A stretch of DNA of 64,000 bases, from positions 150,734 to 214,733 of IMG/VR virus record IMGVR_UViG_3300000553_000004, one strand, 5' to 3'. A program made the position numbers and the translations under genes. Of the stretch, positions 1,013-64,000 are shown in pieces. Position 1 is the first letter of the stretch; every line of letters begins with the position of its first letter. Below the pieces are notes generated by a model. It searched no databases. It was not told the origin of the DNA and saw nothing but the letters and a program-made list of their open reading frames with translations.

Positions 1013-1984
1013 ATGAAATTAGACCACATTGAAAATCTTTATAGGCCGGAAGCCCAAATCATCTTGATGTTTCGTGAGTGTTATGCCCTGGAAAAAATTC
1101 ATGGCACGGCGGCGGGGTTCTCATTCGACCAATCGACAAACGAAATTTCATTTCAATCTGGAGGCGAATCATATTCACGTTTCGTTTCTCTATTCAATCA
1201 AGAACAAATAATCCAAGGTATCAAGAATCTGGGAATTCCTGTTGACAAGATTATTGAAATTTATGGTGAGGCGTATGCAGGTAGCCAACAAGGAATGTCA
1301 CATACCTACGGAAAAACCTTAAAATTTATCGTTTTCGACGTTAAGATTGGAGATAATTTCTTGAATGTTCCTGACGCCGAGGATGTGGCAAAGAAACTCG
1401 GGTTGGAATTTGTTTACTATACCAAGGTTCCATTGATTCGAGCAGTTCAAAACGAATTGGGTATTTTAGTTACTGAAACCTATCTCGGTGGTATTGACGC
1501 ACAACGTGACTTACCGAGTATGCAGGCAGTTCGCAACGGAGTTTCTACGCCTGAAGCCTTTACAAAGGGCGAAGGCCCGAAACGTGAAGGTGTTGTTCTC
1601 CGCCCATTGGTTGAGATGACTCTGAACAACGGAAGTCGTATCATCACCAAACACAAGGGAGATGCGTTTAAGGAGACTGCCACCGCACGTCCTGTCGTCG
1701 ACCCGTCCAAACTGATTGTCTTGGAAGAGGCGACAGCCATCGCAAATGAATGGGTCACAAATCACCGATTGGGACATATTTTACAGAAAATCCAACCGGT
1801 CTATCTCAAAGGCGAAATTCCCATCTTTGATATGTCACAAATTCCACAAATAATCACGGCAATGACCAATGACGTGATTCGAGAAGCCGAAGGTGAAATC
1901 GTGGTATCTGACGCCGCTAAGAAAGCCATTGGCAAAAAGGCAGTCGAATTGTTCAGGGGATATCTGAATTCTCAAGTCAAGTAA
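1013..1984 (+). CDS. RNA ligase, Rnl2-like nucleotidyltransferase
   Basis: Motif I EKIHG, then EIYGE, FIVFDV, REGVVLRP, ITKHK; leaderless start after promoter at 977. Confidence 0.85.
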   Translation: MKLDHIENLYRPEAQIILMFRECYALEKIHGTAAGFSFDQSTNEISFQSGGESYSRFVSLFNQEQIIQGIKNLGIPVDKIIEIYGEAYAGSQQGMSHTYGKTLKFIVFDVKIGDNFLNVPDAEDVAKKLGLEFVYYTKVPLIRAVQNELGILVTETYLGGIDAQRDLPSMQAVRNGVSTPEAFTKGEGPKREGVVLRPLVEMTLNNGSRIITKHKGDAFKETATARPVVDPSKLIVLEEATAIANEWVTNHRLGHILQKIQPVYLKGEIPIFDMSQIPQIITAMTNDVIREAEGEIVVSDAAKKAIGKKAVELFRGYLNSQVK

Positions 1985-22916: not shown

Positions 22917-23015
22917 TGGCCTTTAGCTCAATGGCAGAGCAGAGCACTCACGCGGGCAGTTACGCCTGCATCGTTAATGCTTTGGTTGACAGTTCGAGTC
23001 TGTCAAGGCCAACCA
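22917..23015 (+). tRNA. tRNA (probably CAU, Ile2/Met) with 24-nt insertion in anticodon loop
   Basis: TGGCCTT/AAGGCCA acceptor, canonical D and T arms, 31-nt anticodon loop CTCA[24 nt]TAA. Confidence 0.75.
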
Positions 23016-45165: not shown

Positions 45166-46068
45166 TCAAGAAACACCTTCGAAGAATGATTTTAGTATTG
45201 TATTATCACCGAATTCAAATTTAAGTCTGCGTATTAGATTCTCCGGAACATTCTTTATATCCGTATTATCTACATTGAATCTACCCAAATCGGATGATTT
45301 TCTATATTCGCCCATATCCACGATTGAAATCATATTCTTATCTGCATCATACCGGCCTTCAAAATCACTTCTGGTAGACGGGCCGTGGCATCTATCGGCA
45401 GGTCTTACGTGGAGTTCTTCGGTATCATTGTACCACCACCATATCTTATTTTTCTTATTTTTATAATTATGTCCAATATCATTATATGAGATGACTTCTT
45501 GTACGGCTTTCTTTGGATATTGTTTAACTACGTTCTGAATCTTATTCTTTATAGCATCCACGTCACCGCCTATTATGTAGATGTATTTGTGTTTCATTGA
45601 ACCCATTCCCAAGTAAATTGCGTTGGTTGCCTGATAGATGGTTCCTTTATGACCTTGATTGTCATCGGCAAACGTTACCACCACTTTTATAGATGGTTCA
45701 TCTCTCTTCAATAGTTTTAAAGATTGTCCAATTACGAAGGATTCTAGGTTCTTTATACCAATATCATCTATGAATAGTCTTTTAAGTTCGAGTATTTCTG
45801 TCGGTTTTACTTCTGGTTCGAGAAATCTACCAACAGTATAAAAAGGTACGCCGTAGATTATTACTCCAATCATTTGTCTATTTCCATCTATTTTTTTGTA
45901 TATACCGTAAATTCTTTTTATGCCGGATGGGAATGTTTCAAGGTAATGTTTAAGGACGAACGGTTCGGATTCCTGCCTACTTGTGGGTAAAATTTCAAAA
46001 TCATCCTTCATTTTCTCAAGGATGACAAATTCTTTTAATATTTTGACCACGGCATTTTTTATGCTCAT
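45166..46068 (-). CDS. Mom-like (GNAT-fold) DNA modification protein with C-terminal extension
   Basis: KHYL…GVIIYG…LELKRL…ESFVIGQSLK…VVTFAD..QGHKGTIYQATN..YLG. Confidence 0.8.
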   Translation of the reverse strand: MSIKNAVVKILKEFVILEKMKDDFEILPTSRQESEPFVLKHYLETFPSGIKRIYGIYKKIDGNRQMIGVIIYGVPFYTVGRFLEPEVKPTEILELKRLFIDDIGIKNLESFVIGQSLKLLKRDEPSIKVVVTFADDNQGHKGTIYQATNAIYLGMGSMKHKYIYIIGGDVDAIKNKIQNVVKQYPKKAVQEVISYNDIGHNYKNKKNKIWWWYNDTEELHVRPADRCHGPSTRSDFEGRYDADKNMISIVDMGEYRKSSDLGRFNVDNTDIKNVPENLIRRLKFEFGDNTILKSFFEGVS

Positions 46069-49885: not shown

Positions 49886-49978
49886 ACAATATATCCACAA
49901 ACAAAAAGACACCCGATTATGGGTGTCTTTTTTTATAATTTGACATATGACATAAATTGGATATACTTATTTTTATAT

Positions 49979-50370
49979 GGGCTCGTAATGGTTTCGACAT
50001 GATGTTGAAGATAAACGAAGCACGCCGAGGATGTTATCAGGACTCGTAAAAAGATAACAAAAACATAAATGCTAACCTTAACCGTTTGGCCAACCTCGAT
50101 TTTTCATTCTCGGTGAATGAAGTTGAGGTCGCAGTAGCTTAATAACTACTCCGTCGCACTGACCGACTTCCTCTAAGTTGGATGTGGCGTAAAATAGAGG
50201 AAGAACTGCTTGTAGTTTAAATTATAAGACTGATACGAAAGGCCAGTATGCCAATCTATGACATGTAGGTTGTTCATTACCGATAATGTCGAATTCACCA
50301 AAATGAAATAAGCGTGTAGCGTCGGTTGTTAGATATGTTATGGACGTTGGTTCAACTCCAACCGAGTCCA
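49979..50370 (+). ncRNA. ssrA: tmRNA
   Basis: 5' GGGCTCG…TTCGAC; tag ORF 50071-50142 ANLNRLANLDFSFSVNEVEVAVA*; 3' GGAC-GTTGG-TTCAACT-CCAAC-CGAGTCC-A with G3-U70. Confidence 0.92.
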
Positions 50371-50391
50371 GGGAACAGTAGAATACAACCT

Positions 50392-55513: not shown

Positions 55514-56380
55514 ATGTTAGGTGCTATTATCGGCGATATAGTAGGCTCTCCGTATGAAGGGTCTTCTTTAAATTGGGTGGATGATAAATCATTCCCTCTA
55601 TTTGCAAATGAACTTTCGAGATTCACAGACGACACAATCTTGACCTGCGCTACCGCAGACGCATTATTGAAAATCAGTGATAATAGATGTGATGATAACA
55701 CAGAGTCGTTGATGTCAATGGATAAGATATTTGCCGAGAAATACATAGAATGGAATTTAAAATATCCTGGTCGTGGATATGGAAGTGGATTTCAACAGTG
55801 GGTTGATAACGGTGGAATCGACATAAATCCAAGTTATGCAAATGGATGTATGATGCGTTGTAGTCCAATACCGTTATTTTATATAGATTCATATATGGCA
55901 AGATATACGGCATATGATAGTATTAAAATGACACATAATTCTCCTGAATCGCATCGAGGCGTATGTTCAATCGTGTCTGCTATTCATATGGCTTTACAAG
56001 GTTCTACCAAACTTCAAATCAAAGCTTATGTAGAAGAACAATTCGGTCATATGTTAGATTTAACGGTAGAACAATGGAGAGAACATCCTAAGACTTCGAT
56101 TAGGTGTAATCTCTCAGCTCCACAATCATTAGTATGTTTTATGGAATCTACTGATTATGAATCTACCATCAGAAATGCCGTTTATACTAAAGGTGATACT
56201 GATACTACTGCTGCAATTGCCGGTTCTATTGCAGAAGCTTTCTACGGAGTTAAGTCGATTCCACAAGAGATGATTGATGGAGCTAAATCGAGAATGACGC
56301 CTGAGATGATAGAATTGGTAAATAAATATTATTCAATAATTGGGGAACGTAGAGAACAATATAAAGGATTTAAAATATGA
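55514..56380 (+). CDS. ADP-ribosylglycohydrolase (DraG/ARH family)
   Basis: GAIIGD..GS.YE, FTDDT, NG.MMR, GDTDTTAAIAG. Confidence 0.92.
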   Translation: MLGAIIGDIVGSPYEGSSLNWVDDKSFPLFANELSRFTDDTILTCATADALLKISDNRCDDNTESLMSMDKIFAEKYIEWNLKYPGRGYGSGFQQWVDNGGIDINPSYANGCMMRCSPIPLFYIDSYMARYTAYDSIKMTHNSPESHRGVCSIVSAIHMALQGSTKLQIKAYVEEQFGHMLDLTVEQWREHPKTSIRCNLSAPQSLVCFMESTDYESTIRNAVYTKGDTDTTAAIAGSIAEAFYGVKSIPQEMIDGAKSRMTPEMIELVNKYYSIIGERREQYKGFKI

Positions 56381-56913: not shown

Positions 56914-57067
56914 AAGTTCAAAAACGGTTACAATTAAAATTAAATAAGAGTTGACTTTTTCACTAACTCTGATATAGTTATTTACATGAAGAACAAACAA
57001 ACATAGGTTACTACAAACGACGATAACATCGCCTTCGTAATTTCTTTGTCTTCATATCTTCCTTTAT

Positions 57068-57143
57068 ATCCCATTAACTCAGCGGCCAGAGTGATGCTCT
57101 CTAAAAGCTTTCGTCATCGGTTCGAATCCGATATGGGATACCA
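57068..57143 (+). tRNA. amber suppressor tRNA (CUA)
   Basis: 76-nt cloverleaf, loop CT-CTA-AA with CTA at 57101-57103 (positions 34-36), CCA encoded. Confidence 0.85.
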
Positions 57144-57294: not shown

Positions 57295-57361
57295 CTTTTT
57301 AAATATTAATAGAATACGAACTTGACGTTTTCGAATTTTGTGTTATAGTTATTGACAGTAA

Positions 57362-58587: not shown

Positions 58588-59448
58588 TTAATATATTAAT
58601 TTCCATCCTTTCGTTTGTTTAATTTTATTTTTAATAAGTAACCATACACAACTATGATGTAAATCATATTTTATTCTAAAATCAAAACGAGTTCCTGTAA
58701 ATACTTCGCCTGTATATTGATTTTTAAAAGTATATATAGTTTTGTTATATTGAGAATGATTGTGACCAGAGCATTTATTTTTAATTTTATCTATAACACA
58801 TTGAAGACGTTTCTTTCCTTTCCATATAGATGAGAGACTAGATTTTGTTTGGTTTGAATGATGTTTTCCTAAAAATGGAGGATTGAGTTTATTATTTTTT
58901 ATCAATTGATTTAGATGGGGTATTGAATGAATTCTGCCTTTGTTGCTATTACTTATTTTCTTTTTTATTTCATCGGTCATATCTACTCTATCAGAGATAA
59001 ATGATATATTATAGCATTTACTTCTTTCTGTTTTAGCCATATCCAAATATTTTTGTTCTGTGTCTTTTAGTGTTTTGAAGTTTGCTGTTGTTTGCTCTAT
59101 TATTAGAAAATTAAAATTATTTTTACCGTGTTTATTCCACGAATTTTGAAGATAATTATTTTTGTGGTTGTTTTTATTTAAATGATAAATATGATTACTT
59201 CGTCTTTTATGAAAATTTTTTGTTGAACCAATATAATACTTACCATTAATTTTATTTATTATCTTGTAAATTCCGCTTACCTTTGTGGTATCGTTCGAGA
59301 TTTTCTTTTTTAATTCTTCTTTTGTGTCGGTTATAATACCGCATACGTCTAATTCTCCACTGCTCTCGGATTTCATCTGTGGTTCTATTAAGTTTTTTTC
59401 TCCCCATATAACATTTTCTTTTTTGATTGTTGACATTTCTCCGTTCAT
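58588..59448 (-). CDS. GIY-YIG homing endonuclease
   Basis: SGIYKIINKINGKYYIGS; NUMOD3-like repeats; start uncertain. Confidence 0.88.
   Translation of the reverse strand: MNGEMSTIKKENVIWGEKNLIEPQMKSESSGELDVCGIITDTKEELKKKISNDTTKVSGIYKIINKINGKYYIGSTKNFHKRRSNHIYHLNKNNHKNNYLQNSWNKHGKNNFNFLIIEQTTANFKTLKDTEQKYLDMAKTERSKCYNISFISDRVDMTDEIKKKISNSNKGRIHSIPHLNQLIKNNKLNPPFLGKHHSNQTKSSLSSIWKGKKRLQCVIDKIKNKCSGHNHSQYNKTIYTFKNQYTGEVFTGTRFDFRIKYDLHHSCVWLLIKNKIKQTKGWKLIY
59252..59407 (-). CDS. small basic endonuclease-associated protein (overlapping)
   Basis: MGRKKLNRTTDEIREQWRIRRMRYYNRHKRRIKKENLERYHKGKRNLQDNK. Confidence 0.65.
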   Translation of the reverse strand: MGRKKLNRTTDEIREQWRIRRMRYYNRHKRRIKKENLERYHKGKRNLQDNK

Positions 59449-59504: not shown

Positions 59505-59810
59505 ATGGAAAAATCTTATTGTTATATACTTCAAACTATAGAAAATACGTTATATTGCGGATGGACGCTTGATTTAGATAGACGAGTTATAGAACACAAT
59601 TCCCCAGATAGTAAAACAAAACATACAAGAATTCGTCAACCAGTAAAATTGGTTTATTTTGAAGAATTTGATACGAGGGCAAAAGCGGCCCAACGAGAAT
59701 GTCAAATAAAACGATTATCAAGAAAACAAAAAATCGAATTAATTAAACTAAAATATCCAGAATTTACTATTCCTAATTTTGTTAAGAAACCACCATTTAT
59801 AAAAATATGA
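59505..59810 (+). CDS. small GIY-YIG nuclease (UPF0213/YhbQ-like)
   Basis: YCYIL…LYCGWT.DL.RR..EHN…PVKLVYFE…A.QRE..IKRLSR. Confidence 0.85.
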   Translation: MEKSYCYILQTIENTLYCGWTLDLDRRVIEHNSPDSKTKHTRIRQPVKLVYFEEFDTRAKAAQRECQIKRLSRKQKIELIKLKYPEFTIPNFVKKPPFIKI

Positions 59811-60721
59811 CATTACGAGAAAGATATAGAGGCGCCATGTTAGGTTTGGCGGTTGGAGATGCGTTGGGCGTTCCAGCAGAATTTCAAGAACGAGGAACAT
59901 TTCCAAAGATTACTGAAATGATTGGCGGTGGCCCATTTCGTTTAAATCCTGGCGAGTGGACGGATGACACGACTATGGCATTATGTTTGGCAAATAGTTT
60001 GCTTGAAACAAATGAATTCAATGCAAAAGACCAAATGGATAAATACTGGCGATGGGTAGAGGATGGATATATGTCAAGTAATGGTAAAATGTTTGACATT
60101 GGAGATACTACATCAGAAGCACTTTGTAGATACAGAAAAACTGGCAATCCAATGGCAGGCAGCGACGACCCAAAATCTGCTGGTAATGGTTCTATAATGA
60201 GACTGGCACCAATACCACTTTTCTTTAAGGAAGATGACCAAGGATATCTTTTGACGGCAGCAAGATTAAGTTCAAAAACCACACATGGAGCCAAAACCTG
60301 TATTGATTCTTGTGTTTTATTATCTCTAGCAATTTATTTTGCTTTGAGAGAATTTCCTAAAGAACATTTGTTAAATATATTTACAGAACCGCCGCCATAT
60401 ACATCACCGGAGGTAATAGACATAGCAAAGGGTTCTTATAAAACCAAAACCGAAGACCAAATCAAATCAACGGGATACGTCATCCATACTCTTGAGGCGG
60501 CTTTGTGGTGTTTTCATAATACCGATACATTCGAGGATGGTTTGATAAAGGCGGTCAATCTTGGTCATGATTCAGATACCACAGGCGCCGTATATGGTCA
60601 ACTGGCAGGCGCTTATTACGGAGTTCAGGCGATTCCCCAAAGATGGCTTGACAAGATAGTGAAACGTGATATTATAATAACCGTCGCAGATAATCTGTTC
60701 GACAATAGACCATGCAATTAA
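59807..60721 (+). CDS. ADP-ribosylglycohydrolase (DraG/ARH family)
   Basis: GLAVGDALG, WTDDT, AGNGSIMR, DSDTTGAV.GQLAG. Confidence 0.94.
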   Translation: MTLRERYRGAMLGLAVGDALGVPAEFQERGTFPKITEMIGGGPFRLNPGEWTDDTTMALCLANSLLETNEFNAKDQMDKYWRWVEDGYMSSNGKMFDIGDTTSEALCRYRKTGNPMAGSDDPKSAGNGSIMRLAPIPLFFKEDDQGYLLTAARLSSKTTHGAKTCIDSCVLLSLAIYFALREFPKEHLLNIFTEPPPYTSPEVIDIAKGSYKTKTEDQIKSTGYVIHTLEAALWCFHNTDTFEDGLIKAVNLGHDSDTTGAVYGQLAGAYYGVQAIPQRWLDKIVKRDIIITVADNLFDNRPCN

Positions 60722-61073: not shown

Positions 61074-61874
61074 ATGAAAACGACGGAATTATTATGTAAT
61101 AAATGTGGAAAATCGTTTTTGATGATAGTAAAATACTATAATCAAAAAATTAAAAATGGTCAAAAAGAATTTTATTGTAGTAGAAATTGTTTTATTGATA
61201 ATGTAAAAAGAAAACCAATAAAGAAAATTTGTTTATATTGTCATAAAGAATTTGATTCGACGACATTTAAAGACGCTAAAAACTGTTGTTCTAATGTTTG
61301 TTCTTCAAGATATTCTCAATCATTTGTAAATAAAGATAACATTTCAAAATCTATGAAAAGATTTTGGAAAAACAATCCACAATTACATAAAAAAACAATT
61401 CCGGTTTTGTGTATTTTTTGTAAAGCCGAATTTATTCCAAATGGACAAGAAAAGTGTTGTAGTATAGAATGCAGAAAAAACAAAATGAGATTAAATGGGT
61501 TACTTTCTGTCCAAGTTCAAAAAGAAAATAGACGTAGTAAAAATGAAATTTATTTCGCTGAATTGTGTAAAAAACATTTTCAAAACGTAGAATTTAATAT
61601 ACCAAAATTTAATGGGTGGGATTGTGATGTAATTCTCAATGACCAAAAAGTTGCGGTTATGTGGAATGGTAAATGGCACTATGAGAAGATTACAAGAAAA
61701 CATTCGGTCAATCAAGTTCAAAATAGAGACAAGATAAAATTGAATGAAATCATTAAATGTGGATACACTCCATATGTAATAAAAGACCTTGGAAGAGAAG
61801 ATAATGTGTTTGTAGAATCTGAATTTAAAAAGTTTACAAAATTTTTGTTGACAGATTGTAAAAATGGTATATAG
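61074..61874 (+). CDS. Zn-finger + Vsr/DUF559-like endonuclease (probable homing endonuclease)
   Basis: Repeated CxxC/YCS modules; SKNE…DVIL…WNGKWHY…RDKIK. Confidence 0.7.
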   Translation: MKTTELLCNKCGKSFLMIVKYYNQKIKNGQKEFYCSRNCFIDNVKRKPIKKICLYCHKEFDSTTFKDAKNCCSNVCSSRYSQSFVNKDNISKSMKRFWKNNPQLHKKTIPVLCIFCKAEFIPNGQEKCCSIECRKNKMRLNGLLSVQVQKENRRSKNEIYFAELCKKHFQNVEFNIPKFNGWDCDVILNDQKVAVMWNGKWHYEKITRKHSVNQVQNRDKIKLNEIIKCGYTPYVIKDLGREDNVFVESEFKKFTKFLLTDCKNGI

Positions 61875-62886: not shown

Positions 62887-63210
62887 ATGAGTGATTCGAT
62901 TCAGAAAGACGATGAAAAGTTTAATGATTTAATCACTAAACAACATCCAACGTATGAATCATTTGCCGAATCGTTGCCATCTACAAATGACAACATTGAA
63001 AATGATGACGCCAAGTTAGAAACTTTGGTATATCTTCAAGACATAACGCAAGGGCCGAGAGAACATGATTCACTTGAAGAAAAGTATGAAGAAGAAATCA
63101 TGATTAACGAAGTCACGAAGATGCTTGATAACGATTTTAAAAGACGGTTGCAGCAAGGTGAAGACCCATTCGCCGAATTCTTTAGAAAAAAGGAAGACGA
63201 GCAATGGTGA
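62887..63210 (+). CDS. acidic hypothetical protein
   Basis: 107-aa D/E-rich ORF. Confidence 0.6.
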   Translation: MSDSIQKDDEKFNDLITKQHPTYESFAESLPSTNDNIENDDAKLETLVYLQDITQGPREHDSLEEKYEEEIMINEVTKMLDNDFKRRLQQGEDPFAEFFRKKEDEQW

Positions 63211-63605
63211 ACCAAGACGACAAGCGGTTCCTCGAATTACTGTGTAAGCAGAAAATTCACGAAAAAAGAAAGGCCGCTGTTGCCAAATACCCCGAAAGGG
63301 TATATGTTAGATGTGAAGATTTTAGAAATTGTGTGAAAAACACAATAAAAACGGTAGTTTGAAATAAAAAACAAAAAAAAGCGCAAACGCTTGACAGAAA
63401 CAAAAACTCTGATATACTTATTGACAGATGAAGACAGCATTACAAAATAATAAAGATAAGAAACACAACCCGCAGGGGTTGCCTAAGATGCTCGTATCGT
63501 CTAAAAAATCTGTGTGGCATACGTCATATAGTTATCAATTTAATGATACAAATATTGAAAGGAGCGGCGGACGCTCATAAAGTAGTAATAACAAAACTTT
63601 AAGAA

Positions 63606-63640
63606 CACCGCCCTCAAGAAAATGAGAGGCGGTTTTTCAT
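63606..63640 (+). terminator. terminator/attenuator after 50-aa leader ORF 63428-63580
   Basis: accgcc-ctca…tgag-a-ggcggt-tttt. Confidence 0.65.
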
Positions 63641-63942
63641 TTTAGAATTTAGAGTCAAGCTGGACTTAAAACGAAGTAACGGATAGCACCGTTTAAACGC
63701 TGTATAGTCGGTTGGTCGATGAACCAATTACTACACCTTACAAGGGAGTAGGTTAGACTATAAAAATCATGATATAAATCGGTGAATGCAAGTCCGTGTT
63801 TCATGACTTCAAAGAGAAAGCATTTTGTAGAAGGAAAGCCCCTAACGATGAAGGCTTGACTAATGTGGAGAGACACATAAATTTTTATGGGAAAGCCGCC
63901 CGAGCCAGGCTTGACAGTTCGGAGAGACGAACACAATTTTAT

Positions 63943-64000
63943 AGGCGGGCCGCTGGGCGGTGCCGAAACTCCAAATCTTGGCTTCGTCGGTTCAATTCCG
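63943..64000 (+). tRNA. tRNA-Trp(CCA), truncated by window end
   Basis: CT-CCA-AA loop followed by T arm gtcgg-ttcaatt-ccg. Confidence 0.7.

What the first reader, a model, noticed from the sequence alone, without database searches (positions are those of the whole stretch)
63428..63640. Leader peptide plus terminator upstream of an ncRNA/tRNA-Trp unit: candidate attenuator
Seen: promoter at 63389, 50-aa ORF MKTALQ…SVWHTSYSYQF…RSGGRS*, then a terminator whose 5' arm (accgcc) is complementary to ggcgg in the last codons (63566-63570). Known: this geometry defines ribosome-mediated attenuation. Inference: phage tRNA supply is switched on when ribosomes stall, e.g. after host tRNA depletion.
Basis: partly seen in the sequence, partly recalled or inferred. 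Interest (0 to 1): 0.6.

Follow-up and report, generated by a model that had tools for sequence, protein, structure and literature searches.

The report
Phage leader gene with terminator switch
A freshwater jumbo phage places a small translated gene and a two-state RNA terminator between a tRNA-type promoter and a structured RNA plus tRNA-Trp, so tRNA transcription may depend on how well ribosomes are working; this is conserved in related phages but has not been tested experimentally.

Summary
A strong TG-extended promoter sits at 63391-63418. A 50-codon ORF runs 63428-63580. An intrinsic terminator spans 63607-63643, and GGCGG (63566-70) in the last codons is complementary to its 5' arm.

Fifteen distinct versions from other metagenomes keep the same layout.
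- The ORF looks translated: the frame holds through in-frame indels, and pN/pS is 0.33 in the first 20 codons. It starts 7-10 nt after the -10 box, which is this phage's usual leaderless layout.
- The promoter belongs to a class that otherwise drives tRNA and tmRNA genes (8 of 10 members).
- All 15 versions fold into two exclusive states: small hairpin plus terminator, or antiterminator.
- One divergent relative changed both terminator arms and the Gly codons together. Two relatives carry compensatory changes in the small hairpin.

Weaknesses:
- In this sequence alone the antiterminator is only marginally better than chance (p about 0.06-0.13).
- Covariation rests on few lineages.
- There is no run of regulatory codons.
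- Most relatives place a 55-aa gene before the RNA genes.
- No RNA data exist.

Verdict: a credible translation-sensing attenuator and a new variant of a known kind. The mechanism is unproven.

The parts
63391..63418 (+). Promoter: -35 TTGACA (63391-96), 16-nt spacer, TG-extended -10 TGATATACT (63410-18), followed by TATTGAC. It belongs to the phage's stable-RNA promoter class.
   Evidence: 11/12 match, TG present; of 10 promoters of the form TATA[GC]T+TAT in the genome, 8 lie within 90 nt upstream of a tRNA or tmRNA gene, against 3 of 181 other promoters (Fisher p = 2e-10). The promoter is nearly invariant in 15 variants.
63428..63580 (+). ORF50, a 50-aa leaderless small ORF and the candidate leader gene. 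There is no Shine-Dalgarno sequence. The ATG lies 9 nt after the -10 box here and 7 nt after it in most relatives, which start ATGATG.
   Evidence: the frame is kept in all variants, indels are in frame, and pN/pS is 0.33 over codons 1-20; a family of 49-54-aa homologues exists. Searches found no known family. AlphaFold2 found no confident fold.
63562..63576 (+). Hairpin H2: GAGCG (63562-66), loop GCGGA, CGCTC (63572-76), lying inside the last five codons. It competes with the antiterminator, and its loop exposes GCGG.
   Evidence: Compensatory changes: L032 has GAGAG/CTCTC and L030 has AAGG/CCTT, both accompanied by amino-acid changes.
63562..63570 (+). Antiterminator 5' strand: GAG (63562-64), bulged C, GGCGG (63566-70). 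It covers the codons for the invariant Gly-Gly.
   Evidence: it pairs with 63608-15 in the minimum-energy fold of transcripts that end before the terminator's 3' arm. This holds in 15 of 15 variants, with a gain of -4.6 to -11.0 kcal/mol. L030 has GGTGGG opposite a CCCACC arm.
63578..63601 (+). Hairpin H3: TAAAGT (63578-83, including the TAA stop codon) pairs with ACTTTA (63596-63601). It is present in both states.
   Evidence: L028 has TAAAAT/ATTTTA, a compensatory G-C to A-U change. The stop codon is TAA in 15 of 15 variants.
63607..63643 (+). Intrinsic terminator: 5' arm ACCGCCCTC (63607-15), loop 63616-23, 3' arm GAGAGGCGGT (63624-33), then T tract TTTTCATTTT (63634-43).
   Evidence: -13.4 kcal/mol. 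It is conserved in 15 variants with variable loops. Both arms change together in L030 (CCCACC/GGTGGG).
63654..63860 (+). Downstream structured non-coding RNA of about 207 nt, closed by the helix 63654-61 / 63853-60. It is the first element behind the terminator in this phage.
   Evidence: 67 consensus pairs, 7 with double compensatory changes, and G-U pairs that fix the + strand. No Rfam family matches. It is also present in the distant relative L030.
63863..63942 (+). Two copies of a stem-loop with loop GAGAGA (63863-78 and 63917-32), each followed by an A/T-rich linker. Together they form the 5' leader of tRNA-Trp. The duplication is specific to the window lineage.
   Evidence: the stems covary between relatives (GTTCG/CGAAC, CCAGC/GCTGG, GTTG/CAAC, TGTG/CACA). 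In relatives the tRNA starts 21-26 nt after the TTGAC box, too close for that box to act as its promoter.
63943..64000 (+). tRNA-Trp (anticodon CCA), cut off by the end of the contig. The full gene is seen in the identical locus L002 at 1724-1794.
   Evidence: tRNA-Trp occupies the same position in L004, L013, L025, L026, L028, L029 and L030.

Best explanation
The stretch 63391-63643 is the leader of a phage stable-RNA operon and most likely works as a translation-sensing transcription attenuator.

A strong tRNA-type promoter starts an RNA whose first codons belong to a leaderless 50-codon ORF. The last six codons of that ORF carry the 5' strand of an antiterminator (GAG-GGCGG), 7 nt before an invariant TAA.

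When no ribosome covers these codons, the strand pairs with the terminator's 5' arm, nucleating from the exposed loop of hairpin H2. Polymerase then reads through into the structured RNA, tRNA-Trp and, in relatives, a 55-aa gene and further tRNAs.

When a ribosome follows the polymerase closely and reaches the stop codon, it covers that strand. The terminator hairpin then forms and transcription ends at 63634-43.

Output of the downstream RNAs would therefore rise when translation is slow or blocked anywhere in roughly the first 40 codons.

Shown: the anatomy, its conservation, the two predicted states, the partial covariation and the promoter class. Inferred: that ORF50 is translated, that the terminator works, and that ribosome position decides between the two states.
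For: - Anatomy is confirmed.
- Promoter class: 8 of the 10 promoters of this type lie within 90 nt of a tRNA or tmRNA gene, Fisher p = 2e-10 (examples).
- Room for another promoter: only about 20 nt lie between the T tract and the ncRNA helix in the window and in L025. The downstream TTGAC boxes are the 3' strand of the ncRNA closing helix and sit too close to the tRNA 5' end.
- ORF50 coding signature: the frame is preserved with indels in multiples of three, whereas the spacer after the stop codon varies by 1, 2 or 4 nt. pN/pS is 0.33 for codons 1-20. A family of 49-54-aa homologues exists.
- Leaderless starts are the rule in this phage: a -10 box followed by 6 nt and then ATG is enriched about ninefold, and only 16 of 96 ORFs have an SD-like motif.
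- Two-state fold: it is predicted in 15 of 15 variants, with an antiterminator gain of -4.6 to -11.0 kcal/mol and the terminator state 4-12 kcal/mol lower.
- Covariation: the L030 terminator arm CCCACC gains 0 to -0.7 kcal/mol with the ORF ends of the other 14 variants but -7.0 with its own GGTGGG. That value is reached by 1-3% of shuffled or synonymously recoded controls. H2 is compensated in L032 and L030, and H3 in L028.
- Codon pattern: paired third-codon positions are frozen even where the amino acid varies (63562 is G in 14 of 14 under R/G/E/T codons). The unpaired four-fold site 63577 shows all four bases.
- The closest variants have no synonymous change in the last 14 codons despite 26 summed nonsynonymous differences.
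Against: - In the window alone the antiterminator is not significant (rank 4-5 of 31 terminators; shuffles p = 0.064 and 0.11).
- Given the peptide ...RSGGRS and a CCGCC stem, synonymous recoding gives equal or larger pairing gains. Some of the complementarity therefore follows from Gly-Gly codons.
- The decisive three-way covariation comes from one lineage (L030). Given a conserved Gly-Gly, it needs only one specific synonymous base, roughly a 1-in-4 chance.
- Seven close variants show no double compensatory change.
- There is no run of codons for any amino acid, and the Trp codon is replaced in P0011.
- The peptide sequence is conserved, which suggests a function of its own.
- In the window the ATG is 9 nt from the -10 box, not the 6-7 nt typical of leaderless genes. 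The transcript would carry a 2-nt leader of unknown efficiency.
- The host is unknown, so coupling of transcription and translation cannot be assumed.
- No RNA run holds the sequence.
- A weak promoter-like site (63856, 9/12, no TG) exists in the window lineage only.
Confidence: 0.45

Rival explanations
1. ORF50 is an ordinary small phage protein gene with its own strong promoter. The hairpins and terminator only end and stabilise its mRNA. The terminator is constitutively leaky, which sets a fixed ratio between ORF50 mRNA and the downstream ORF55/ncRNA/tRNA transcript. The complementarity to the Gly-Gly codons either is a by-product or merely tunes how leaky the terminator is, without sensing ribosomes.
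For: - The peptide sequence is conserved across a family, with pN/pS 0.33-0.48 over codons 1-37.
- The leaderless start is the phage's standard gene layout.
- The pairing gain is unremarkable against other terminators and shuffles, and follows largely from GGN GGN codons.
- ORF55 directly follows the terminator in 13 of 15 variants, which resembles a plain small-gene operon with an internal terminator.
Against: - The promoter is of the stable-RNA class, not the class that precedes protein genes.
- RNA-level constraint overrides the protein at the C-terminus: compensatory amino-acid-changing substitutions occur in H2, and third positions are frozen under varying amino acids.
- The L030 terminator and Gly codons changed together.
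- AlphaFold2 gives no fold (pLDDT 59.9, no secondary structure).
- Even in this model a translating ribosome would necessarily disturb H2 and the antiterminator strand.
Confidence: 0.28
2. The two-state RNA is a genuine switch but is set by a trans factor rather than by the ribosome. Candidates are the basic ORF50 peptide binding its own H2 hairpin (autoregulation), ORF55, a host protein, or the downstream ncRNA or a tRNA pairing with the exposed H2 loop.
For: - The H2 loop GCGGA is invariant even at position 63571, which is unpaired in both states. This hints at recognition by something.
- ORF50 has a net charge of about +6, and its family is always linked to this RNA.
- H2 and the antiterminator both show compensatory change.
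Against: - No RNA-binding or other domain was detected, and there is no predicted fold.
- No T-box or other riboswitch family was detected even at E <= 10.
- The fixed placement of the stop codon 7-9 nt after the antiterminator strand is explained more simply by ribosome occlusion.
Confidence: 0.12
3. The 215-nt promoter-to-terminator transcript is a non-coding small RNA, and the open frame is incidental.
For: - It is driven by a stable-RNA-type promoter.
- The fold is very stable (MFE -58.7 kcal/mol, z = -6.39).
- There is no SD sequence, and the ATG is not exactly at the expected transcription start in the window.
Against: - The frame stays open over 48-54 codons in every variant of an A+T-rich sequence.
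- All indels inside the frame are multiples of three, while those just after the stop codon are not.
- There is synonymous excess in the first 20 codons.
- Most relatives carry ATGATG with the first ATG at the leaderless distance.
- Part of the set was found by protein search, which favours intact frames. The variants found through DNA or through a neighbouring gene (window, L004, L008/L013) agree.
Confidence: 0.07

Closest known systems
Leader-peptide transcription attenuators of amino-acid operons (trpL, hisL, pheL, leuL, thrL, ilvL of enterobacteria; established knowledge)
   Same: A promoter-proximal translated ORF, an intrinsic terminator ahead of the regulated genes, a mutually exclusive antiterminator that shares the terminator's 5' arm, and a stop codon placed so that a terminating ribosome covers the antiterminator's 5' strand.
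   Different: - There is no run of regulatory codons.
- The ORF is 50 codons long, with a conserved sequence, and sits on a leaderless mRNA.
- The competing hairpin (H2) lies around the antiterminator strand rather than upstream of it. An untranslated transcript is therefore predicted to read through rather than super-attenuate.
- The regulated genes are a structured RNA and tRNAs of a phage.
Ribosome-stalling attenuators of Gram-positive resistance genes (bmrB-bmrCD, PMC4191407; vmlR, PMC9226507)
   Same: Any slowing of the ribosome within an upstream ORF, rather than shortage of one amino acid, shifts a terminator/antiterminator balance towards read-through. This is the logic proposed here.
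   Different: Those elements respond to antibiotics, have SD-led short uORFs and control protein genes. Here the signal is unknown, the ORF is leaderless and the target is stable RNA.
Computationally defined terminator/antiterminator riboregulators (PASIFIC approach, PMC5314783)
   Same: Two mutually exclusive structures, one of which is an intrinsic terminator, located in a 5' leader.
   Different: That class is generic and says nothing about the ligand. Here the switch overlaps the end of a coding frame.
Small stable RNAs co-transcribed with tRNAs in the phage T4 tRNA gene cluster (species 1 and 2 RNAs; own knowledge, not checked here)
   Same: An unexplained structured RNA embedded in a phage tRNA transcription unit and probably processed from the same precursor.
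   Different: I know of no leader ORF or terminator switch for the T4 cluster. There is no sequence relation: no phage record matched.
PyrG leader (Rfam RF02371)
   Same: It is the best Rfam match to 63569-63643: a short leader with a terminator hairpin.
   Different: The score is 25.7 bits against a gathering score of 65 (E = 0.43), and the match is essentially to the generic terminator. This element is not a member.

Membership tests
Ribosome-mediated (leader-peptide) transcription attenuator | A short ORF at the start of the transcript that is translated | tested here: met
   Comparative evidence only. The frame is kept with in-frame indels, pN/pS is 0.33 over codons 1-20, and a homologue family exists. 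The start is leaderless, as in many genes of this phage. Translation itself was not observed.
Ribosome-mediated (leader-peptide) transcription attenuator | An intrinsic terminator between the leader ORF and the regulated genes | tested here: met
   A 9-bp G+C-rich stem plus T tract at 63607-43 (-13.4 kcal/mol), conserved in 15 variants.
Ribosome-mediated (leader-peptide) transcription attenuator | An antiterminator helix mutually exclusive with the terminator | tested here: met
   It is predicted in 15 of 15 variants, with cognate-specific pairing in L030. Statistical support is moderate only.
Ribosome-mediated (leader-peptide) transcription attenuator | Ribosome position decides which helix forms (the stop codon is placed so that a terminating ribosome masks the antiterminator strand) | tested here: met
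   By geometry only. The antiterminator strand 63562-70 ends 7 nt before TAA at 63578-80, with a spacing of 7-9 nt in all variants. The functional consequence cannot be tested here.
Ribosome-mediated (leader-peptide) transcription attenuator | Clustered regulatory codons for the sensed amino acid | tested here: not met
   There is one Trp codon and no tandem repeats of any codon. Trp at this position is replaced in P0011. This feature defines the amino-acid operon subtype but not the stalling-sensor subtype.
Ribosome-mediated (leader-peptide) transcription attenuator | Regulated genes lack a promoter of their own | tested here: inconclusive
   There is no room for one in the window or in L025 (about 20 nt). 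The TTGAC boxes are structural. However, a weak site at 63856 (9/12) exists in the window, and unrecognised promoter types cannot be excluded.
Ribosome-mediated (leader-peptide) transcription attenuator | Read-through depends on leader translation | not testable with these tools
   No RNA run holds the stretch. Reporter assays or Term-seq are needed.
T-box riboswitch | Stem I with a specifier codon, and a T-box sequence in the antiterminator bulge | tested here: not met
   No Rfam T-box match even at E <= 10. The antiterminator's internal loop is 3 x 4 nt with no NCCA-pairing motif.
Any curated Rfam leader or sRNA family | Score at or above the family's gathering threshold | tested here: not met
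   Only tRNA and tmRNA pass in the window and in L002-L004. The best sub-threshold match is the PyrG leader at 25.7 bits against 65.

The most novel reading that the evidence does not exclude
The element is a phage-built sensor of host translational capacity. When ribosomes lag or stall on the leaderless ORF50, the antiterminator forms and switches on an operon of a novel structured RNA, tRNA-Trp and, in relatives, tRNA-Lys, tRNA-Ile and a 55-aa protein. Stalling could follow from tRNA-cleaving defence nucleases, starvation or translation-targeting toxins. This would be an inducible counter-measure to tRNA depletion, and the first attenuator known to control tRNA genes in a virus.
Probability: 0.2. 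Interest if true: 0.85.

Novelty: new variant of a known kind. Interest (0 to 1): 0.62.

Why it matters
Phage tRNA genes are now thought to replace host tRNAs destroyed by anticodon nucleases and related defences (PMC10264068, PMC11464382). How phages time or dose their tRNA output is almost unknown.

A leader that reads ribosome progress and gates a tRNA/ncRNA operon would be a simple feedback between translation capacity and tRNA supply. It would also extend classical attenuation to stable-RNA genes, to leaderless mRNAs and to viruses.

The same locus yields three further things:
- a conserved, unclassified structured RNA of about 207 nt that is always attached to tRNA-Trp;
- a clear case of RNA structure overriding protein sequence at the end of a gene;
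- a genome whose genes are mostly expressed from leaderless transcripts.

If the switch instead proves to be a constitutive leaky terminator, the finding is ordinary.

Tried and rejected
Searches that found nothing:
- blastn of 63200-64000 against 50,697 phage records: no match.
- Rfam at gathering and at E <= 10: nothing but tRNA, tmRNA and noise.
- ORF50 against PHROGs, Pfam, the ESM Atlas and the PDB profile search: nothing.
- AlphaFold2 on a 17-sequence alignment: pLDDT 59.9 and no secondary structure. With so shallow an alignment this is not evidence against a fold.
- Sequencing runs: 24 freshwater DNA holders and no RNA run.
- A promoter/start DNA pattern in IMG/VR returned only loci already held.
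- Literature searches for attenuators or leader peptides in front of phage tRNA genes found none.

Ideas considered and rejected:
- Trp-specific sensing: only one TGG codon, and it is not invariant.
- Lack of an SD sequence as an argument against translation: the whole phage is SD-poor and leaderless.
- The TTGAC boxes at 63856 and 63912 as tRNA-Trp promoters: they are the ncRNA closing helix and its duplicate. In relatives the tRNA begins only 21-26 nt after the box, upstream of any possible start site.
- An internal promoter TTGAAA-17-TAAAGT at 63555: its -10 is not conserved in L004, L010 or L019, and its transcript would begin just before the terminator.
- A minus-strand reading of the ncRNA region: G-U pairs would become A-C, and the 93-aa minus-strand ORF has no support.
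- The formal pair-counting tool was not used for the terminator and antiterminator. MAFFT shifts L030 by one column, so per-sequence constrained folds and a swap matrix were used instead.

Full report
SOURCE. The window is the last 64 kb of a 214,733-bp viral contig. The contig comes from the Trout Bog Lake hypolimnion assembly (contig name). It ends at window position 64000, inside tRNA-Trp. No record in the phage collection resembles the region. Near-identical DNA occurs in about 20 freshwater metagenome runs, and none of them is RNA.

OBSERVATION.
- The promoter has -35 TTGACA at 63391-96, a 16-nt spacer, TG at 63410-11 and -10 TATACT at 63413-18.
- The ORF runs 63428-63580 (50 aa). A TGA two codons upstream excludes any earlier start.
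- The terminator has 5' arm 63607-15, loop 63616-23, 3' arm 63624-33 (9 bp with one bulged A, -13.4 kcal/mol) and a T tract at 63634-43.
- GGCGG at 63566-70 is complementary to CCGCC at 63608-12. The pairing extends through GAG 63562-64 with CTC 63613-15.

The whole promoter-to-terminator RNA folds far better than shuffled versions (MFE -58.7 kcal/mol, z = -6.39). Rfam recognises nothing here. The best match is the PyrG leader at 25.7 bits against a threshold of 65.

RELATIVES. I collected 15 distinct versions of the unit. They were found in four ways: through the neighbouring 107-aa gene, through a DNA pattern, through word and profile protein searches, and through a metagenome scan. The DNA was fetched, and the sequences are listed.

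Synteny is constant. The order is tRNA-Cys, a gene of about 100 aa, the promoter, ORF50, the terminator, usually a conserved 55-aa ORF, a structured RNA of about 207 nt, a short hairpin, and then tRNA-Trp. tRNA-Trp is often followed by tRNA-Lys, tRNA-Ile and tRNA-Lys. The window lineage and L025 lack the 55-aa ORF. In those two, only about 20 nt lie between the terminator's T tract and the structured RNA.

IS ORF50 TRANSLATED? Probably.
- The frame is open in every version (48-54 codons) in A+T-rich DNA.
- Every indel inside the frame is a multiple of three. The spacer just after the stop codon varies by 1, 2 and 4 nt.
- Among five close variants, pN/pS is 0.33 for codons 1-20 and 0.48 for codons 21-37.
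- The profile search found further homologues of 49-54 aa. They share M1, L5, S25, Y34, F38, D40, G47, G48 and S50.

One caveat applies. Members found by protein search are biased towards intact frames. The three versions found independently of the ORF (window, L004, L008/L013) agree with the rest.

The missing Shine-Dalgarno sequence is not an objection. Only 16 of 96 ORFs in the window have an SD-like motif. The phage carries more than 100 promoters of the form TTGACN-16-TGnTAnnnT, typically followed by exactly 6 nt and then ATG. That spacing occurs 9 times where about 1 is expected under the strictest motif. The phage therefore relies heavily on leaderless mRNAs.

Most ORF50 relatives begin ATGATG, with the first ATG 7 nt after the -10 box. 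The window version has lost one T, which leaves its ATG 9 nt after the -10 box.

No family, fold or atlas neighbour was found for the peptide. AlphaFold2 predicts no structure (pLDDT 59.9).

IS IT A LEADER? The promoter says so. Ten promoters in the genome have -10 TATAGT or TATACT followed by TAT. Eight of these lie 11-90 nt upstream of a tRNA or tmRNA gene, compared with 3 of 181 other promoters (Fisher p = 2e-10; examples). The ninth drives a LAGLIDADG endonuclease. The tenth is this one.

Its initial transcribed sequence TATTGACAG is shared with the tRNA-Leu promoter at 57322. The stretch AACTCTGATATA-TTATT-ACA-ATGAAGA is shared with the promoter at 56951, which heads a tRNA cluster through a 6-codon mini-ORF.

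The TTGAC boxes at 63856 and 63912 look like -35 boxes but are not promoters for the tRNA. GGCTTGAC is the 3' strand of the 8-bp helix that closes the structured RNA (63654-61 with 63853-60). That RNA has 67 consensus pairs, 7 of them with double compensatory changes. Its G-U pairs fix it to the + strand. In relatives the tRNA starts only 21-26 nt after the box.

In the window lineage this module is duplicated. The first copy carries a weak -10-like TAAATT (9/12). I cannot exclude that this site acts as a promoter in this lineage only.

THE SWITCH. In transcripts cut before the terminator's 3' arm, the minimum-energy fold pairs the ORF's last codons with the terminator's 5' arm. This holds in all 15 versions. 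The resulting helix encloses hairpin H3 (63578-83 with 63596-63601, which includes the TAA). It gains -4.6 to -11.0 kcal/mol over the fold without it.

In full-length transcripts three elements form instead: the terminator, H3, and a small hairpin H2 (63562-66 with 63572-76). This state is 4-12 kcal/mol lower. The H2 loop GCGGA exposes four of the five core antiterminator bases, which gives an obvious nucleation site.

HOW STRONG IS THE EVIDENCE? In the window alone it is weak.
- A gain of -6.8 kcal/mol ranks 4th-5th among 31 terminator-like hairpins of the genome.
- The same gain is reached by 6.4% of whole-ORF shuffles and 11% of local shuffles.
- If the peptide is held fixed and its last eight codons are recoded at random, the gain is on average even larger. 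This happens because GGN GGN pairs readily with CCGCC and because recoding destroys H2.

Comparison with relatives adds weight.
- In L030 both terminator arms have changed (CCCACC and GGTGGG). The Gly-Gly codons read GGT GGG there, instead of GGC GGA.
- In a swap matrix, the L030 arm gains 0 to -0.7 kcal/mol with the other 14 ORF ends and -7.0 with its own. Only 1.2-3.3% of shuffled or recoded L030 controls reach that value.
- H2 is maintained by paired changes that alter amino acids: GAGAG/CTCTC in L032 (Ser to Arg and Arg to Leu) and AAGG/CCTT in L030.
- H3 changes G-C to A-U in L028.
- The outer three antiterminator pairs exist as GAG/CTC, GGG/CCC or GGGA/TCCC in different lineages.
- Position 63562 is G in 14 of 14 versions, although its codon encodes R, G, E or T.
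- 63565, 63568 and 63574 are invariant or compensated.
- 63577 is unpaired in both states and four-fold degenerate, and it shows all four bases.
- The five closest variants have no synonymous change in the last 14 codons, against 26 summed nonsynonymous differences.

The limits are plain.
- The three-way covariation comes from one lineage. Given a conserved Gly-Gly, it needs only one particular wobble base.
- Position 63571 is unpaired yet invariant.
- Seven close variants show no double change.

I therefore rate a selected antiterminator at about 0.6-0.65.

MECHANISM. The antiterminator's 5' strand ends 7 nt before an invariant TAA (9 nt in L030). A ribosome at the stop codon must therefore cover it, together with H2 and the 5' strand of H3. 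That leaves the terminator arm free to form the terminator.

A ribosome stalled at or before about codon 40, or no ribosome at all, leaves the strand available. Efficient, closely coupled translation would thus favour termination, and slow or absent translation would favour read-through.

This differs from trp-type attenuators. Those contain runs of regulatory codons, and their untranslated leaders terminate. The proposed logic is closer to the general stalling sensors bmrB-bmrCD and vmlR (PMC4191407, PMC9226507).

Nothing links the sensor to tryptophan specifically. There is one TGG codon, and it is replaced in P0011.

It fits the known role of phage tRNAs against tRNA-targeting defences (PMC10264068). 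It also fits the presence of an RNA ligase gene at 1013-1984. It remains conjecture.

RIVALS.
- A plain small gene followed by a constitutively leaky terminator (0.28).
- A switch set by a trans factor, such as the basic ORF50 peptide (0.12).
- A non-coding small RNA (0.07).
- The attenuator reading (0.45).

NOVELTY. Literature searches for leader peptides or attenuators in front of phage tRNA genes returned nothing relevant. The parts are all of known kinds. The combination is not described: a leaderless conserved ORF, a terminator switch overlapping its last codons, a stable-RNA promoter, and a phage ncRNA/tRNA operon as the target. I class it as a new variant of a known kind.

Noticed in passing
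window 63654-63860 (also L004 4939-5144, L013 1979-2184, L019 1744-1946, L030 about 2003-2165): An unclassified structured RNA of about 207 nt, closed by an 8-bp helix. It has 67 consensus pairs, 7 of them with double compensatory changes, and lies on the + strand. It always sits directly upstream of tRNA-Trp and matches no Rfam family. Its function is unknown.
   Followed up: partly
window 63863-63878 and 63917-63932: Two copies of a short hairpin with the conserved loop GAGAGA. Its stem covaries between relatives (TGTG/CACA, GTTCG/CGAAC, CCAGC/GCTGG, GTTG/CAAC). It is followed by AATTTTAT and then the tRNA 5' end. The module, together with GGCTTGAC, is duplicated only in the window lineage.
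   Followed up: partly
window 63943-64000 (complete in L002 1724-1794): The tRNA-Trp of this lineage (and of L013) is non-canonical. It has a shortened D region and a 7-bp anticodon stem with an A-C mismatch. ARAGORN calls it, but Rfam's tRNA model misses it at the gathering score. Relatives L004, L019 and L030 have a canonical tRNA-Trp at the same place.
   Followed up: partly
whole genome G000; examples at window 34842, 36100, 37984, 40929, 41791: More than 100 promoters of the form (GC)TTGACN-16-TGnTAnnnT are followed by exactly 6 nt and then ATG. Only 16 of 96 ORFs have an SD-like motif. The phage seems to express most genes from leaderless mRNAs, which constrains what its unknown host can be.
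   Followed up: partly
window 22793, 49940, 56951, 57322, 61848, 62532, 63391; genome minus strand at 64787 and 65685: A distinct promoter class (-10 TATAGT or TATACT followed by TAT) is almost exclusive to tRNA and tmRNA genes: 8 of 10 members, Fisher p = 2e-10.
   Followed up: yes
window 56951-57143: A promoter paralogous to the ORF50 promoter is followed by a 6-codon mini-ORF (MKNKQT, stop) and a 90-nt leader. It precedes a tRNA with anticodon CUA, which ARAGORN labels Pyl and which would be a potential amber suppressor.
   Followed up: no
window 49979-50371: A phage-encoded tmRNA (Rfam 131 bits) with its own stable-RNA promoter at 49940. The predicted tag is unusually long at 23 residues and ends in VAVA.
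   Followed up: no
L004 4759-4926, L013 1803-1970 and 11 other variants; absent from the window and L025: A conserved 55-aa ORF of unknown function starts about 5-12 nt after the terminator's T tract, with no promoter or SD sequence. It must be expressed from read-through transcripts. It has been cleanly deleted in the window lineage.
   Followed up: partly
window 22917-23012: Rfam finds a tRNA of 96 nt (54.7 bits) that ARAGORN does not report. It may carry an insertion or an intron.
   Followed up: no
window 1013-1984, 55514-56380, 59807-60721, 45166-46068, 61074-61874, 58588-59448; L002 1842-2270; genome about 102300-102990 (minus strand): The region encodes an RNA ligase, two ADP-ribosylglycohydrolases and a Mom-like protein. 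It also encodes four kinds of homing-type endonuclease (HNH, GIY-YIG, PD-(D/E)XK, LAGLIDADG) interspersed with the tRNA genes.
   Followed up: partly
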